A DNA stretch of 6,159 bases, taken from positions 1-6,159 of the forward strand of contig RQSC01000019.1 in NCBI GenBank assembly GCA_013416795.1, in the 5' to 3' direction. Shown in pieces: positions 120-6,159 of this stretch (the first letter of the stretch is position 1; every line of letters begins with the position of its first letter). Made by a program: the position numbers and the translations under genes. The notes under the pieces were generated by a model. The model was given only the letters and a program-made list of their open reading frames with translations, was not told where the DNA came from and ran no database searches. This DNA is from Prasinococcaceae sp. CCMP 1430. Lineage: Eukaryota > Plantae > Prasinodermophyta.

Positions 120-1816
120 ATGGCGTCCAACCGGCAGTTCATGTCCTCGGACGAATGGCGCAAGGCGCAGGAGCTCGAGGAGGCGCGGAAGGTGCGGCGG
201 CGCGCACGCACGAGCGCGCGCCGCGCAGCAGCGGCAGTAGGGCAAGCCGCGCGCGCAGCGCTCGGCGGGGCGCGGTCCTCGACGACGGGGCACGAGCGAG
301 CGTCGCGCGCCTCGCTGACACGCGCCCGCCGCGCTTACCGCGCGCGCACATCGCTCTACTTTGACTGCAGGCTGGTCTGGCGCCCGCGGCCGTCGACGAG
401 GATGGCAACGCCATCAACCCGCACATCCCGCAGTACATGTCGCAGGCGCCGTGGTACCTCAACCAGCACCACCCATCGCTCAAGCACCAGCGCAACCTCA
501 ACGAGGCGAAGCGCGAGGGCATGCGCGACGACGCGCTCAAACGCGACGAGACGTACGAGGGCAAGCGCGACCGCTGGGCGGGGTTCGAGGCGGAGGAGTT
601 CGACGCGGTGTTCGAGCGCCACGCCAAGCTGGAGGAGATCAAAAAGGCCAAGGCCAAGGCGGATGCCATGCGCAAGCTGCAGGGGGGCGCGGGCGGCGCC
701 GGCGCCGACGGCGGCGCGCAGGAGCAAGGAAAGGACGACGAAAAGCTGGACGAGTCGGACGTGAAGGACGTGGGCGCCAAGGTTGAGTCGCGCGTGCGCT
801 CGGCGGGCGGCGGCTCGTCCGGCACGGTGCGCAACCTGCGCATTCGCGAGGACACCGCCAAGTACCTGCTCAACCTGGATACGGAGAGCGCGTACTACGA
901 CCCCAAGACGCGCTCCATGCGCGCCGACCCCCGCCCTGACCTACCCGACCACCTCAAGACCTTCCGCGGCGACAACTTCACGCGCGTGACCGGCGCCGCC
1001 AAGGAGATGCGCGAGCTGCAGGTGCACGCGTGGGAGGCCAACGAGCGCGGCGTCGCCATGGACACGGCAGGCCTACCCTCGCAGGCCGAGCTGCTGCACA
1101 AAGAATTCAAGCGGCGCAAGGAGGAGCTCGAGCGCAAGAAGGAGACGGCCGTCACCGACCGGTACGGCGACGCGGCGGACGTCATGCCCGAGGAGCTGAA
1201 GGTGGTGGCCGCCACGGAGCACTACGTGGAGTACGACGCCACCGGGCGCGTCCTGCGCGGCGCGGAGGCCGCCAAGGCGCGCTCCAAGTACGAGGAGGAC
1301 GCGCTCGAGCAAAACCACACGCAGGTGTGGGGCAGCTACTGCCGCGTGGCCGACGGCCAAATCCAGTGGGGCTACGGCTGCTGCGCGAGCACCACGCGCA
1401 ACTCGTACTGCGTGGGCGAGTCGGGCCGCGAGGCCGCGCTCGCCGCCGACGAGCAGATGCGCGCCAACCTCGAGGCCGCGCGCCAGCGCAAGGAGGACGG
1501 CACGGAGGCCAAGGAGCGCGCCGAGCGCGCGGCCAAGGCCAAGGAGAAGGAGGCGAAGAGGGCCGGATGGGGCGGCGAGGCGCGCGACGTGGAGCTCGAC
1601 AAGGACAAGCTCGCGGCGGCGATGGCGGCGGAGGAGGCCAAGTGGGCGGGCGAGGATGGCGAGGAGGCCGACGAGCGCAAGCGCAAGTACAACGTCACGC
1701 ACTCGGTGGACGTCACCGAGGAGGAGATGGAGGCGTACCGGCTGAAGCGGCCGAGGGCGGCCGACCCGATGGCCGACCCGAAGAAGGGCGGCACCGACGG
1801 GTACGACTTCGTGTGA
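120..1816 (+). CDS. SLU7: Pre-mRNA splicing factor SLU7, exons 120-191 and 371-1816, 505 aa
   Basis: Splicing gives [24 protein letters not shown]|[30 protein letters not shown], the conserved Slu7 N-terminus. Further Slu7 motifs: [78 protein letters not shown]. Third codon positions are strongly G/C. TGA at 1814-1816. Confidence 0.96.
192..370 (+). other. Spliceosomal intron in SLU7, phase 0, 179 nt
   Basis: AAG|GTGCGG ... CTCTACTTTGACTGCAG|GCT. A CTGAC branch-like motif lies near 314-318 with no AG between it and the acceptor. Removal restores the conserved EEARK-AGLAPA join. Confidence 0.92.
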
Positions 1817-2096: not shown

Positions 2097-2387
2097 TCAC
2101 TCGCTGTCGCTGCCCGCGGCCGCCTCGGCCTCGGCCTTGGCCTTGGCTTCGGCCCTAATGCGCTTGAGCTTGCGGCGCTCGGCCTCCATGCTGAAGTCGA
2201 AGAAGTCCGGGTCGTTCTTCGCGCCATCCACCACCTTCTGAATCGTCGCGAAGAAGAGCACCACGAACGTGCCGACGCCCACCAGCCCGGTCACCTTCCC
2301 GACGACCTCCGCCCCGTCGAGCGCGCGCGCCGCCACGCGGCGCTGCGGCGCCGCCGAAGCGCGGTGGGGCGCCGCCGCCGCTCCGCG
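2097..2387 (-). CDS. Small single-TM hypothetical protein, probably plastid-targeted, 5' end missing
   Basis: RGAAAAPHRASAAPQRRVAARA (transit-peptide-like), then LDGAEVVGKVTGLVGVGTFVVLFFATIQKVV (hydrophobic helix), then the charged tail DPDFFDFSMEAERRKLKRIRAEAKAKAE..SDSE*. Host-like G/C third positions and a TGTAA after the stop. There is no in-frame ATG upstream before an in-frame TAG. Confidence 0.7.
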   Translation of the reverse strand, partial: RGAAAAPHRASAAPQRRVAARALDGAEVVGKVTGLVGVGTFVVLFFATIQKVVDGAKNDPDFFDFSMEAERRKLKRIRAEAKAKAEAEAAAGSDSE

Positions 2388-2499
2388 TACGAGGACGATG
2401 CAGAAGACGGCAGGCGGCGGCACTTGATGCGCATGTGGCTGTCCGTGCGCGACGGCTGGGAGCTACCTCCTGCTTATGCCGCGCGCTACGGCACCATCG
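2379..2499 (+). CDS. C-terminal fragment of a TauD/TfdA-like Fe(II)/2-oxoglutarate dioxygenase, partial
   Basis: Translates RSAYEDDAEDGRRRHLMRMWLSVRDGWELPPAYAARYGTI. This resembles the remembered family end (H.RTAFED..EPERKRHLLRLWL....R.LP..FAERYG.V..GDRGG). It starts abruptly at about 2379 and ends at the N at 2500. Confidence 0.7.
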
Positions 2500-2974: not shown

Positions 2975-4026
2975 TTACTTGGCGTCGGCGTCGCGTATGC
3001 GCTCGAGCTCGCCGGGCTGCCACTGCAGCGCGTTGGGCTCGTACGCCTCCGCCTTGCCGCCGATGCTCTCGCCCACGCCGGTGTAGACGCGCACGGCGGC
3101 CAGCGCGGCCTCCTTGGCGCCGCCGCCGAGCAGGGACCGCGAGCCGGAGGGCATCTTCGCGTAGTAGCTGCCGAGGCGCGACCTGGCGGCGCGGCTCGAG
3201 AGCGAGATGGCGAGGCCGTCGGGCCCCCACTGCGGGCCCTTGCCGGGCTCGTCGATGATGGCCATGCCGCTGCCGCCCACCTTGGGCAGCTTGGCGGCCT
3301 CCTCGCCGGCGCCCAGGCCCGTCCCGGCGGGCCACGCGAAGAGGAACGCCGAGATGGCGTCGCGCCAGTCGCCGTAGCCCAGCCAGCCCTTGTGTGTGTG
3401 TATGTATCAGTGCGTGTGTGTGTGTGTGTCAGTGTGTGCGTCTGCGTGTGCGTGTGTGCGCGTGTGCGCGCGAAGGCGCGCGCGTGCGTGTCCAGGCGTG
3501 GCCGCGAGCACTCGCGCACCTTGGGCTGGTACCCGCCGAAGACGGTGCCGTCGGCGGCCTCGGCGACAAGCACGCACGCGCCCATGCCGTCCACGCGCGC
3601 GTGGAAGGCGTCCTCGCTCCACCCGTCGCGCTCCGCATCGTACAGCAGCGCCAGCGGCATGAACTCGAGCTGCGTCTGGCGCAGCAGCGGCCGCACGGCC
3701 ACGAGGTCGGCGCAGCCGGCGTCGCTGTCGACGGGCGCGGCGAACTCATCCACGACGGGGGGCCACTGGTCGGGCCACTCCTCCTTGGTCATGCGCTTGA
3801 GGCCGGCGGGCTCCATGTCCTCCATGGCGCCTGCGCCGAACACGAACTTTGCGAGGCGCTCGGCGAAGCCCTCGGGCTCGGCCTTGGCGCCGCCGGTGTT
3901 GTCGCCGCCGTCAGTGCCGTCGCCGCGGCTGGCAGCGCAGCGCACACATGCGCGCGCGCGTGGCCGCGGCGCATGTGTGTGCGCGTGTGCGCGCTCGCGC
4001 GTGTGTGTGTGCGCGCGTGCGCGCAT
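2975..4026 (-). CDS. TLDc-domain protein, plastid-type; exons 4026(?)-3520 and 3388-2975, 306 aa if ATG 4026 is the start
   Basis: TLDc-type motifs LLYDAERDGWSEDAFHARVDGMGACVLVAEAADGTVFGGYQPK|GWLGYGDWRDAISAFLFAWP..KLPKVGGSGMAIID..GPQWGPDGL..SRLGSYYAKMP. TAA at 2977-2975. The 5' end is uncertain: either an in-frame ATG at 4026 or a CAG acceptor at 3931-3929. Confidence 0.88.
3389..3519 (-). other. Spliceosomal intron in the TLDc gene, phase 0, 131 nt, AAG acceptor
   Basis: AAG|GTGCGC ... CTGATACATACACACACACAAG|GGC. Removal joins GGYQPK to GWLGYG in frame. Confidence 0.88.
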
Positions 4027-4046: not shown

Positions 4047-4287
4047 NNNNNNNNNNNNNNNNNNNNNNNNNNNNNNNNNNNNNNNNNNNNNNNNNNNNNN
4101 NNNNNNNNNNNNNNNNNNNNNNNNNNNNNNNNNNNNNNNNNNNNNNNNNNNNNNNNNNNNNNNNNNNNNNNNNNNNNNNNNNNNNNNNNNNNNNNNNNNN
4201 NNNNNNNNNNNNNNNNNNNNNNNNNNNNNNNNNNNNNNNNNNNNNNNNNNNNNNNNNNNNNNNNNNNNNNNNNNNNNNNNNNNNNNN
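4047..4287. other. Assembly gap of 241 N
   Basis: Direct count. The gap must contain at least the SDR 5' end and the divergent promoter region. Confidence 0.98.
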
Positions 4288-4288
4288 G

Positions 4289-5278
4289 CGGCTGGGCGGC
4301 GCGGCGATCGACGCGGGTGCCGGCGCGGACCTCGCCAGCGTCGCGAGCGCGCGAGCCTTCGCAGGCGCGCTCCGCGCGGCGGGCGTGGACTCGGTGGACG
4401 CGCTGGTGTTCGCCTCTGGCGTGGTCTCCGCGCCGCTCTCCGCGGGGCGCACAGTGGAGGGCTACGACCTCAACGTGGGCGTGAACGCCGTGGGGCCGCT
4501 CGCGCTGGCGCTCGGCGCGCTCGACCTCGTGCGCGCCGCTCGCGGGAGAGTGGTGCTCGTGGGCTCCACCGCCGCGCTCGACGTCCCCCCCTCCACGGCC
4601 TTCCTCGATGACCTCGCGTACAACACGAGCAGGCCACACGCGCCACGCGCGGCCTACGCGGAGAGCAAGGCGCTGGGCGTGCTGCTGGTCGACGAGCTCG
4701 CCAGACGCGAGGAGGAGCTCGGCACGGGCGTCACGGCCAATGTCATACACCCGGGGCCCGCTGCCACGCTGGCCGTGCGCTACGAGCTACCCGCCAGATA
4801 CGAGCAGAGGCTCGGTATGTCCGAGGAGCAGCTCGCGCAGCAGGTGTGTGTGAGCGCGTAGTGCGCGTCGCGCGCGTGTGTGCGTGCGTGCACGCGCGAA
4901 CGCGCGCTGGCGCACTGGGCCGACCGCAGACTCTCGGCCCATCCTCGCACACACACACACGCACGCGCATGCGCACACCCGTCCCAACACGCGCACTCAC
5001 ACGCACCACACCCACCCGCGCGCGCACGTGCACGTGCACACACACACGCACACCATCAGGCGCGGCGCCTGGGCCTGCGCACCGCCGACGAGGCCGCCGC
5101 GGGCCCCGAGTGGCTTGCGGCGTCGGCCGAGGCGGCCGGCGCGACGGGCGAGTTCTTCGTCGACGCAGGCGTGCCGCTGCCCGCCGAGTACGCGCCGGCC
5201 TGGCGCACGCCCGAGGCGGCGCGGAGGGCGTGGGACGAGCTCGCGCGCGTGTGTGGGGGGATGCCGCCACCCGCGTAA
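4289..5278 (+). CDS. Short-chain dehydrogenase/reductase (RDH/WWOX/Tic32-like), 5'-partial; exons <4289-4843 and 5060-5278
   Basis: ADLASVASARAFA, VDALVFASGV, TVEGYDLNVGVNAVGP, RVVLVGS (catalytic Ser), YAESK (YxxxK, Tyr at 4655-4657), VTANVIHPG, GEFF, AARRAWD. The TGxxxGxG motif is absent and presumably lies in the gap. TAA at 5276-5278. Confidence 0.9.
4844..5059 (+). other. Spliceosomal intron in the SDR gene, phase 0, 216 nt
   Basis: CAG|GTGTGTGTG ... CACACACGCACACCATCAG|GCG. It removes an in-frame TAG at 4859-4861 and joins QLAQQ to ARRLGLRTADEAA. Confidence 0.85.
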
Positions 5279-5469: not shown

Positions 5470-6159
5470 TTACGCGGTGTAGGTGCCGAGGACGTCCTCG
5501 GCGTCGAGAAGCTTGTACGTATTGCCGTCGTTGTCCTTGAGGTCCGAGCCGGCGTACTTGAAGTACACCACCTGCGTGCCGGTGGGGTACGGCACGGGCG
5601 TGGTCTCCACCTCGCCCTCCTCGCCGTCCTCCTTGGGAACGGTCTTGCCGGGGCCGACGCGCACCACCTTGCCCGTGGCGGGCCTCTCGTTCTGCTGCGC
5701 GGTGAGCAGCAGGCCGCCCTTGGTCTCGGTCGCGGCGGCGTCGGCGAGCACGAGCAGCCGGTCGCCGATGGGCTGAATCTTGGCGAGGTCGTTGACGGTG
5801 GCGCCGGAGGTGGGCACCGTGCCGAGGACGTCGCGCTCGCGGATGATGGCGTGCAGCTCGCCGCCCATCATCACCTCCTCCACGCCGATGCCAAACTTCG
5901 AGTAGATGACGGTGTCGCCCTTCTTGAGCGTGACGGTGGGCGCGTCGCCCACGGCGACGACGTCGCCGCTCGTCGGCCGCTTCTGCGCCTCGGCGGGCAG
6001 CAGCACGCCGCCTTCCGTCTTGTCCTCGATCTCCGCCACCTTGAGAAAGATGCGGTCCTCGCGCGGCGACACCGTCTTCACGCCCATCGGCAGCTCCACC
6101 GCCATGCACCGCACGCACCCGCGACGCGCGGCGGGCCGCGCGGCGGCGGCGGCGGCCGC
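5470..6159 (-). CDS. CPN20: Chloroplast co-chaperonin with two tandem GroES domains (CPN20/CPN23 type), 5'-partial
   Basis: Domain 1: PREDRIFLK..EDKTEGGVLLP..RPTSGDVVAVG..YSKFG..RERDVLG. Domain 2: PIGDRLLV..TETKGGLLLT..RPATGKVVRVGPG..YFKYAG..AEDVLG. The frame stays open to the window edge with a transit-like AAAAAAARPAARRGCVRC|MAVEL. TAA at 5472-5470. The RPTSGD/YSKFG/YFKYAG features recall the algal CPN23 paralogue, so the exact symbol is uncertain. Confidence 0.93.
   Translation of the reverse strand, partial: AAAAAAARPAARRGCVRCMAVELPMGVKTVSPREDRIFLKVAEIEDKTEGGVLLPAEAQKRPTSGDVVAVGDAPTVTLKKGDTVIYSKFGIGVEEVMMGGELHAIIRERDVLGTVPTSGATVNDLAKIQPIGDRLLVLADAAATETKGGLLLTAQQNERPATGKVVRVGPGKTVPKEDGEEGEVETTPVPYPTGTQVVYFKYAGSDLKDNDGNTYKLLDAEDVLGTYTA

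What the first reader, a model, noticed from the sequence alone, without database searches (positions are those of the whole stretch)
485..580. SLU7 has lost its conserved CCHC zinc knuckle
Seen: between the conserved anchors PSLKHQR and YEGKRDRW there are only 20 residues ([20 protein letters not shown], 494-553). They contain no Cys or His, are in frame, and include no intron. Established: yeast, plant and human Slu7 carry a much longer segment here (roughly 70 aa in Arabidopsis, from memory) with KYRKGACxNCGAxxHxxxxCxxRPR, a zinc knuckle linked to 3' splice-site choice. The C-terminal Cys cluster (WGYGCC..SYC) is retained. Inference: this is a lineage-specific remodelling of a second-step splicing factor, possibly co-evolving with the atypical acceptors seen in this window.
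Basis: partly seen in the sequence, partly recalled or inferred. Interest (0 to 1): 0.7.

Follow-up and report, generated by a model that had tools for sequence, protein, structure and literature searches.

The report
SLU7 lacking its zinc knuckle
The marine green alga Prasinoderma coloniale and its closest relatives make an otherwise normal, expressed SLU7 splicing factor that has lost the small zinc-binding "knuckle" usually treated as a hallmark of this protein. I also found this loss in several unrelated algal groups.

Summary
The window holds the two-exon SLU7 gene of Prasinoderma coloniale (exon 1 120-191, GT-AG intron 192-370, exon 2 371-1816). Between PSLKHQR (473-493) and YEGKRDRW (554-577) lie exactly 20 in-frame codons (494-553) with no Cys or His. 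A complete MMETSP transcript protein (P0121, 505 aa) equals exon 1 plus exon 2 residue for residue, so this is not an assembly or annotation artefact.

The same roughly 54-residue deletion occurs in an uncultured relative (81% identical, genomic contigs) and in Prasinococcus capsulatus (52% identical, transcript). These three form one clade inside the green-lineage SLU7 tree. All other green algae and plants examined keep the C-x2-C-x4-H-x4-C motif. The simplest reading is one old loss in the order Prasinococcales.

The loss is not unique. Cryptophytes, the diatom/pelagophyte/dictyochophyte group and some uncultured eukaryotes also lack the knuckle. I found no paper describing this; one states that all homologues have it.

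The suggested link to "atypical acceptors" is unsupported. All three well-defined introns in the window are GT-AG, although their 3' ends are CA-rich and free of AG.

A knuckle-bearing second copy could not be excluded genome-wide, and read laying was unavailable. This is a new variant of a known protein, of moderate interest.

The parts
120..191 (+). SLU7 exon 1 (24 codons, MASNRQF...EEARK)
   Evidence: Identical to residues 1-24 of the transcript-derived protein P0121.
192..370 (+). SLU7 intron (179 nt, GTGCGG...CTGCAG, phase 0)
   Evidence: Sequence. It is removed in the MMETSP transcript, since P0121 equals exon 1 plus exon 2. It is absent from the 81%-identical relative L001. The last 70 nt are AG-free, with CTGAC at -52 and TTGAC at -6.
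371..1816 (+). SLU7 exon 2 (481 codons plus stop)
   Evidence: Translation. Identical to P0121 residues 25-505. Pfam Slu7 PF11708, E 1.2e-79, covers profile positions 2-253 of 253.
413..457 (+). Conserved N-terminal motif [15 protein letters not shown]
   Evidence: I39-P44, P51, W52 and Y53 are invariant in alignments A1 and A2. It aligns to human SLU7 residues 46-93.
473..493 (+). Upstream anchor PSLKHQR
494..553 (+). 20-residue charged linker [20 protein letters not shown] that stands where about 74 residues, including the CCHC zinc knuckle, lie in other SLU7s
   Evidence: Alignment A1 shows a deletion of about 54 columns shared with L001 and Prasinococcus. The AlphaFold2 model has mean pLDDT 45-53 over residues 61-90, coil.
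554..577 (+). Downstream anchor YEGKRDRW, start of the Pfam Slu7 domain
827..880 (+). Invariant core helix [18 protein letters not shown]
   Evidence: R178-D194 are invariant or nearly so in A2. It lies inside PF11708, 'Prp18-interacting factor'.
1313..1411 (+). Retained C-terminal His/Cys cluster (NHT..WGS..WGYGCC..SYC)
   Evidence: N339, H340, W344-S346, W357, G358, C361, C362, Y370 and C371 are invariant in A2.
1670..1774 (+). Conserved C-terminal tail DERKRKYN...[18 protein letters not shown]
   Evidence: Aligned to human SLU7 up to residue 581. Nearly invariant columns in A2.

Best explanation
This is the orthologous, transcribed SLU7 exon-ligation (second-step) splicing factor of Prasinoderma coloniale. 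A block of about 54 residues was deleted in the common ancestor of Prasinoderma and Prasinococcus (order Prasinococcales, phylum Prasinodermophyta). The block held the CCHC zinc knuckle, part of the WY.RG motif upstream of it and the basic ERPR..GAK..T stretch after it. A 17-20 residue charged linker, predicted to be unstructured, remains. All other modules are kept: the N-terminal [11 protein letters not shown] motif, the full Pfam Slu7 core, the C-terminal His/Cys cluster and the C-terminal tail.

Inferred mechanism: the protein still docks on the C*/P spliceosome through Prp18 and through the Prp8 linker, endonuclease and RNaseH surfaces. It has given up the anchor that the knuckle provides on the Prp8 N-terminal domain in yeast. 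It has probably also given up the Prp18-independent early recruitment route that the knuckle offers. Parallel losses in other algal lineages indicate that the knuckle is an accessory anchor that can be dispensed with, not a core requirement.
For: Shown here:
- The gene model and the linker are read directly from the sequence.
- P0121 (UniRef A0A7R9Y3G5, MMETSP Transcript_5524, PRCOL_00004842; 505 aa, 'type:complete') equals exon 1 plus exon 2 exactly.
- The same ORF is present in independent ENA and Logan assemblies, P0001 and P0122-P0126.
- The Pfam Slu7 domain is complete, and human SLU7 (PDB 5xjc chain Z) aligns on both sides of the gap: query 2-48 to human 46-93, and query 61-468 to human 162-581.
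- The same deletion is seen in an uncultured marine relative, 81% identical. The genomic loci L001-L004 read ...KHQKNLNEEKEDRKRDEELKRDVTY, then a 122-nt GT-AG intron, then GKRDRW.
- It is also seen in the complete Prasinococcus capsulatus transcript P0003.
- In the tree the three form a clade (SH-aLRT 98) inside Viridiplantae (97), beside Pyramimonadales, Streptophyta and core Chlorophyta, all of which keep the knuckle.
- No knuckle-bearing Prasinoderma or Prasinococcus protein appeared among the best hits whose species I could look up.

From the literature:
- Slu7 can be recruited either through its EIE element bound to Prp18 or through the knuckle bound to the Prp8 N-terminal domain (bioRxiv 10.1101/2020.09.22.306647).
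- A yeast knuckle allele, slu7-ccss, exists as a usable strain and is synthetic-lethal with prp8-101.

Independent natural losses:
- Cryptophytes: the Teleaulax transcript P0376 and the contiguous genomic ORF in L005.
- Pelagophytes, dictyochophytes and diatom-like proteins.
- Intronless environmental genes in L009-L011.
Against: - No functional data exist for this protein; the docking mode is inferred from yeast and human structures.
- No genome-wide tBLASTn of P. coloniale could be run, so a second, knuckle-bearing copy is not strictly excluded.
- In humans the knuckle is embedded in the nuclear localisation signal and retains SLU7 in the nucleus (review PMC9658179). How a knuckle-less protein stays nuclear is unknown.
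- Yeast genetics link Slu7 to the use of distal 3' splice sites. The introns in this window appear to have long AG-free 3' regions, with CTGAC candidates 40-52 nt upstream, so a weaker Slu7 is not obviously harmless here.
- The tree is a quick search with SH-aLRT support only.
Confidence: 0.75

Rival explanations
1. Assembly or gene-model artefact: the knuckle is really there but was lost by mis-assembly or by a falsely called intron. This does happen in some public SLU7 models.
For: Such artefacts exist. The Pyropia yezoensis model P0328 lacks the knuckle, yet the genomic locus L008 encodes RKGACENCGSLTHKRREC in frame between the anchors. Several angiosperm and insect models show half knuckles.
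Against: In the window the two anchors are 60 nt apart in one open frame. A complete transcript-derived protein is identical. Independent assemblies, an 81%-identical relative and Prasinococcus all show the same architecture.
Confidence: 0.01
2. This is a divergent paralogue, and a separate knuckle-bearing SLU7 elsewhere in the genome does the main job.
For: No genome-wide search was possible. The branch leading to Prasinoderma is long, 0.67 substitutions per site. A crayfish 'Slu7-like' paralogue without a knuckle exists, P0325.
Against: The P. coloniale proteome and transcriptome sets (UniRef, EukProt, MMETSP) are in the searched collections, and only one Slu7 cluster from this species surfaced. 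The top MMETSP hits belong to other genera. The protein sits where the species tree predicts. All other conserved modules are intact. Prasinococcus shows the same single knuckle-less form.
Confidence: 0.07
3. Adaptive co-evolution with an unusual 3' splice-site architecture. Prasinoderma introns carry CA-rich, AG-free tracts before the acceptor, so there is no competing AG, and the knuckle-dependent contribution to 3' splice-site choice became dispensable or was re-tuned.
For: In the window's three introns the nearest upstream AG is 53-130 nt from the acceptor. The last 60 nt of two of them are 77-82% A+C. Earlier scan notes report the same (GT)n/(CA)n polarity genome-wide (unverified lead). 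Slu7 alleles change 3' splice-site choice in yeast.
Against: The sample is three introns, and no branch points are mapped. The acceptors themselves are canonical AG. The SLU7 intron of the knuckle-less relative (L001) ends in an ordinary pyrimidine-rich tract, TCTCTGTTTTCTAG. Cryptophytes and diatoms lost the knuckle without any known intron pattern of this kind. Correlation was not tested.
Confidence: 0.12
4. The knuckle's function is supplied in trans by another CCHC protein or by a changed Prp8 N-terminal surface.
For: None directly. The genome encodes other CCHC-knuckle proteins (scan notes, unverified).
Against: No candidate was identified. Repeated independent losses argue for dispensability rather than for repeated invention of a substitute.
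Confidence: 0.05

Closest known systems
Human SLU7 (PDB 5xjc chain Z, 586 aa) and yeast Slu7
   Same: Homologous over the N-terminal motif (query 2-48 to human 46-93) and from YDGKRDRW to the C-terminal DPMA (query 61-468 to human 162-581), phmmer E 1.2e-83. The Pfam Slu7 domain is complete.
   Different: Human residues of about 94-161, which include the CCHC knuckle, are replaced by 12 unaligned residues. In yeast this knuckle anchors Slu7 on the Prp8 N-terminal domain. In humans it governs nuclear retention.
SLU7 of other green algae and plants (Pyramimonas P0009, Cymbomonas P0010, Chlamydomonas CHLRE_03g194000v5 P0020, Mesostigma P0012, land plants)
   Same: 41-50% identity over the full length, with the same order of modules. 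They are sister groups in the tree.
   Different: All of them keep WY.RG...KYRKGAC.NCG..TH..KDC.ERPR..GAK.T, with 73-74 residues between KHQR and GKRDRW. By the same measure Prasinococcales have 18-22.
Cryptophyte Slu7 (Teleaulax amphioxeia P0376; P0231, P0232; environmental locus L005)
   Same: Full-length Slu7 with no CCHC between the anchors, confirmed by a transcript and by a contiguous genomic ORF.
   Different: The segment keeps roughly its ancestral length (71 residues from PWY to GKRDRW) but is Cys-free and unrelated in sequence. This is an independent event, and the protein is not close to Prasinoderma.
Slu7 of pelagophytes, dictyochophytes and diatoms (Aureococcus, Chrysophaeum, Rhizochromulina, Nitzschia-like)
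   Same: No CCHC knuckle in an otherwise complete Slu7.
   Different: The knuckle is replaced by a conserved module of about 50 residues, W[IV]EAL.RGK.PWLPAKV..LDG.LD.EFE.G, with no Pfam hit. Oomycetes and brown algae keep the knuckle.

Membership tests
SLU7 / Pfam PF11708 (pre-mRNA splicing, Prp18-interacting factor) | Full-length match to the Slu7 domain model above the gathering score | tested here: met
   268.2 bits against a cut-off of 27.9, covering profile positions 2-253 of 253.
SLU7 / Pfam PF11708 (pre-mRNA splicing, Prp18-interacting factor) | Conserved N-terminal [11 protein letters not shown] motif upstream of the domain | tested here: met
   Invariant columns I39-P44, P51, W52 and Y53. 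Aligned to human residues 46-93.
SLU7 / Pfam PF11708 (pre-mRNA splicing, Prp18-interacting factor) | C-x2-C-x4-H-x4-C zinc knuckle between KHQR and GKRDRW. This is a hallmark of the described orthologues. It is not part of the Pfam model, so I treat it as typical rather than defining. | tested here: not met
   There is no Cys or His in 494-553, and the first Cys is residue 348. Control: Pfam zf-CCHC does not fire even on knuckle-bearing Pyramimonas P0009, so a regular-expression pattern search for the motif, not Pfam, was used as the test.
SLU7 / Pfam PF11708 (pre-mRNA splicing, Prp18-interacting factor) | C-terminal His/Cys cluster and the ERKRKYN...EEMEAYR...DPMA tail | tested here: met
   H340, C361, C362, C371, D489 and P490 are invariant in A2. 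The alignment to human SLU7 runs to residue 581.
SLU7 / Pfam PF11708 (pre-mRNA splicing, Prp18-interacting factor) | Orthology: the protein branches with the SLU7 of related organisms | tested here: met
   Prasinococcales clade at SH-aLRT 98 inside Viridiplantae at 97 (quick IQ-TREE search).
SLU7 / Pfam PF11708 (pre-mRNA splicing, Prp18-interacting factor) | Binds Prp18 and Prp8 and promotes exon ligation | not testable with these tools
   Needs biochemistry or cryo-EM.

The most novel reading that the evidence does not exclude
The repeated natural loss or replacement of the Slu7 zinc knuckle tracks a change in how 3' splice sites are presented. Losses are seen in Prasinococcales, cryptophytes and the diatom/pelagophyte/dictyochophyte group. 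In Prasinoderma the change would be the CA-rich, AG-free tract before the acceptor. On this reading, these lineages run exon ligation without the anchor on the Prp8 N-terminal domain, and they are natural mutants that reveal what the knuckle is for.
Probability: 0.12. Interest if true: 0.7.

Novelty: new variant of a known kind. Interest (0 to 1): 0.42.

Why it matters
The Slu7 zinc knuckle is treated as universal. [quoted passage not shown] In cryo-EM structures it is one of the anchors that holds Slu7 on Prp8, and it offers a route of early recruitment. A whole deep-branching order of green algae, and at least two other large algal groups, manage without it. That makes the knuckle an accessory module. 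It also provides ready-made natural deletion and replacement variants for testing what the knuckle contributes to 3' splice-site choice, recruitment order and nuclear retention. On the practical side, knuckle-less SLU7 models need checking, because some are annotation errors (Pyropia).

Tried and rejected
The RNA evidence is the MMETSP transcript protein P0121.

2. Pfam zf-CCHC as a test for the knuckle. Rejected, because it stays silent even on knuckle-bearing Pyramimonas SLU7. A regular-expression pattern search for the CCHC motif between sequence anchors was used instead.

3. Pyropia yezoensis as an independent loss. Rejected, because the genomic DNA encodes the knuckle and the gene model spliced it out. 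Half-knuckle models in Sesamum, Dillenia, Buddleja, Acer, Vitis, Timema, Macrostomum, Phytophthora cactorum and Rhodosorus are treated as probable model errors and not counted.

4. A short distance from branch point to 3' splice site as the reason the knuckle could be lost. Not supported. The AG-free zones are 53-130 nt long, and the best CTGAC candidates lie 40-52 nt upstream. With three introns and no lariat data this remains inconclusive.

5. AlphaFold2 model of P0121 (pTM 0.27, mean pLDDT 65). It shows only that the linker has no confident fold. It was not used for fold searches, because Slu7 is extended and folds on the spliceosome.

6. A hidden knuckle elsewhere in the window. There is only one chance match with the wrong spacing, in intergenic sequence on the minus strand.

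7. Paralogue search. No tool reaches the P. coloniale genome, so I could only check named hits and the scan's own notes.

8. Spliced model. Exons were searched by reference, and full-length work used the database protein P0121.

Full report
**What is in the window.** The window is GC-rich eukaryotic DNA. On the plus strand it holds a two-exon gene. Exon 1 is 120-191 (24 codons), the intron is 192-370 (GTGCGG...CTGCAG) and exon 2 is 371-1816 (481 codons plus stop). Exon 2 matches Pfam Slu7 (PF11708) over the whole model, with E 1.2e-79. An exact-sequence look-up identifies the organism as Prasinoderma coloniale. Protein P0121 (UniRef A0A7R9Y3G5, MMETSP Transcript_5524 'type:complete', gene PRCOL_00004842, 505 aa) begins with the exon 1 translation and continues with the exon 2 translation, with no difference at any residue. 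Exon-wise references were used for the searches, and full-length analyses used the database protein P0121.

**The observation.** Between PSLKHQR (473-493) and YEGKRDRW (554-577) lie exactly 20 codons, 494-553, reading [20 protein letters not shown]. They contain no Cys or His, and the first Cys of the protein is residue 348. The anchors are 60 nt apart in a single open frame, so no exon can be hidden between them.
- In 296 Slu7 proteins that have both anchors, 258 carry a CCHC motif between them, with anchor spacing of median 86 and minimum 78 residues. The spacing is 34 in P. coloniale.
- Against human SLU7 (PDB 5xjc chain Z) the alignment breaks cleanly. Query 2-48 matches human 46-93, and query 61-468 matches human 162-581. 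About 68 human residues, including the knuckle, have no counterpart.

**Not an artefact.**
- The transcript-derived protein is identical to the gene model.
- The same ORF recurs in independent ENA and Logan assemblies, including a 99%-identical variant.

**Phylogenetic extent.** Three taxa share the deletion.
- P. coloniale itself.
- An uncultured marine relative, 81% identical. Genomic contigs from marine metagenome assemblies, two of them under study PRJEB4352 (L001-L004), read ...KHQKNLNEEKEDRKRDEELKRDVTY, then a 122-nt GT-AG intron, then GKRDRW. No CCHC occurs in any frame of L001.
- Prasinococcus capsulatus, from a complete MMETSP transcript (P0003, 52% identical, 17-residue linker).

In alignment A1 the three share one gap of about 54 columns. 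The gap removes the segment that holds the knuckle (KYRKGAC.NCG..TH..KDC) and the basic ERPR..GAK.T stretch. Pyramimonas, Cymbomonas, Pterosperma, Chlamydomonas, a pedinophyte, Mesostigma, Chlorokybus and Mesotaenium all keep this segment, as do all land plants examined.

A quick maximum-likelihood tree groups the three knuckle-less proteins (SH-aLRT 98) inside Viridiplantae (97), next to Pyramimonadales, Streptophyta and core Chlorophyta. The simplest reading is one deletion in the ancestor of Prasinococcales, in the orthologous SLU7 gene. The top MMETSP hits whose species I could look up belong to other genera, and no second Slu7 from P. coloniale surfaced. A genome-wide tBLASTn was not possible, so a knuckle-bearing paralogue is unlikely but not excluded.

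**Is the loss unique?** No. An exhaustive HMMER search found 2331 representatives with E <= 0.001. Together with a word search seeded on one of the odd proteins, it turned up further knuckle-less Slu7s. I checked these for artefacts.

Real cases:
- Cryptophytes. The evidence is the Teleaulax amphioxeia transcript P0376, the related clusters P0231 and P0232, and an environmental genomic contig, L005. In L005 the anchors and a Cys-free linker lie in one contiguous ORF.
- Pelagophytes (Aureococcus, Chrysophaeum, an MMETSP1166 strain), the dictyochophyte Rhizochromulina, and diatom-like proteins. Here the knuckle is replaced by a conserved module of about 50 residues, W[IV]EAL.RGK.PWLPAKV..LDG.LD.EFE.G. 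Oomycetes, brown algae and Chrysoparadoxa keep the knuckle. The module has no Pfam hit.
- Intronless environmental genes with short or unrelated linkers, in L009-L011.

Rejected cases:
- The Pyropia yezoensis model P0328. Its genomic DNA encodes the knuckle in frame, inside a falsely called intron.
- Several plant and animal models with half knuckles.

The knuckle has therefore been lost or replaced several times. Within the green lineage, I saw the loss only in Prasinococcales.

**What the literature says.**
- I found no paper describing a knuckle-less SLU7. [quoted passage not shown] - In the C_i intermediate, Slu7 is recruited either through its EIE element bound to Prp18 or through the knuckle on the Prp8 N-terminal domain, and the two bind independently (bioRxiv 10.1101/2020.09.22.306647).
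- In human cells the knuckle lies within the nuclear localisation signal and keeps SLU7 in the nucleus (review PMC9658179).
- The yeast knuckle allele slu7-ccss is used as a strain and is synthetic-lethal with prp8-101. By my own recollection this fits the knuckle being important but not strictly essential.
- The P. coloniale genome paper does not discuss splicing factors (PMC7455551).

**How it most likely works (inference).** Every Slu7 module except the knuckle block is intact. This covers the N-terminal motif, which in yeast binds Cwc22 and the Prp8 linker and endonuclease domains. It also covers the invariant [13 protein letters not shown] helix inside the 'Prp18-interacting' domain, the globular C-terminal region with its His/Cys cluster, and the C-terminal tail. 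The linker has no confident predicted structure, with pLDDT 45-53. The protein should therefore still act in exon ligation, tethered through Prp18 and through the Prp8 RNaseH, endonuclease and linker surfaces, but without the anchor on the Prp8 N-terminal domain and without knuckle-mediated early recruitment. None of this was tested.

**The acceptor idea.** The three well-defined introns in the window are the SLU7 intron 192-370, the TLDc-gene intron 3389-3519 on the minus strand, and the SDR-gene intron 4844-5059. All are GT-AG. Their 3' regions are unusual in composition.
- The nearest upstream AG is 53-130 nt from the acceptor.
- Two of the three have 77-82% A+C in the last 60 nt, with (CA)n runs.
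- The best CTGAC branch-site candidates lie 40-52 nt upstream.

This fits earlier scan notes on polarised (GT)n/(CA)n introns in this genome, which I treat as leads only. It does not show co-evolution with Slu7. The sample is three introns. The knuckle-less relative's own SLU7 intron ends in an ordinary pyrimidine-rich tract. Other knuckle-less lineages are not known to share the pattern.

**Verdict.** It needs correcting on uniqueness, and it is unsupported on the acceptor link. This is a new variant of a known protein. It is of moderate interest as a set of natural knuckle-deletion and knuckle-replacement experiments.

Noticed in passing
Proteins P0333, P0293, P0301, P0360, P0384-P0399, P0443; loci L009 6001-7809: In pelagophytes, a dictyochophyte and diatom-like proteins, the Slu7 knuckle is replaced by a conserved module of about 50 residues, W[IV]EAL.RGK.PWLPAKV..LDG.LD.EFE.G. 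It looks Tudor- or SH3-like by eye and has no Pfam hit. Oomycetes and brown algae keep the knuckle.
   Followed up: partly
P0376, P0231, P0232, P0145; L005 741-1787: Cryptophyte Slu7 (Teleaulax amphioxeia and environmental relatives) also lacks the CCHC. A Cys-free segment of about the ancestral length stands in its place, and it is contiguous in genomic DNA.
   Followed up: partly
L008 about 1855 (Pyropia yezoensis CM020618.1): The public gene model KAK1861143.1 splices out the SLU7 zinc knuckle. The genomic DNA encodes it in frame between LKHQR and KRDRWNG, so this is an annotation error.
   Followed up: yes
window 192-370 versus L001 3653-3774: Intron turnover between close relatives. P. 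coloniale has a phase-0 intron after codon 24 that the 81%-identical relative lacks. The relative has a 122-nt intron exactly at the 3' edge of the knuckle deletion (TY|S-GKRDRW) that P. coloniale lacks.
   Followed up: partly
window 3389-3519 (-) and 4844-5059 (+): These introns start with GT/GC-rich repeats (GTGTGTGTGAGC...) and end in (CA)n-rich, AG-free tracts (...CACACACACAAG and ...CACACGCACACCATCAG). This matches the polarised (GT)n/(CA)n introns noted elsewhere in this genome.
   Followed up: partly
window 5470-6114 (-): A tandem double Cpn10 (Cpn20-type co-chaperonin). Pfam Cpn10 matches two stretches, E 2.3e-37. The ORF may continue beyond the end of the window.
   Followed up: no
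window 2975-3939 (-), 4289-5278 (+), 2097-2423 (-): Neighbouring genes: a TLDc-domain gene on the minus strand (PF07534, E 1.5e-6), a short-chain dehydrogenase interrupted by the intron 4844-5059, and a 108-aa ORF without a family match.
   Followed up: partly
window 4047-4287, 2500, 2836-2900: An assembly gap of 241 N lies inside or next to the 5' part of the TLDc and SDR genes. There is a single N at position 2500, and a (CACG)n microsatellite in the intergenic region.
   Followed up: no
P0211 (Rhodosorus marinus): This red-algal Slu7 model has a truncated knuckle (KYRKGACQ-KDCMERPR, about 9 residues missing). It could be a degenerate knuckle or a model error. I did not check it against DNA.
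   Followed up: no
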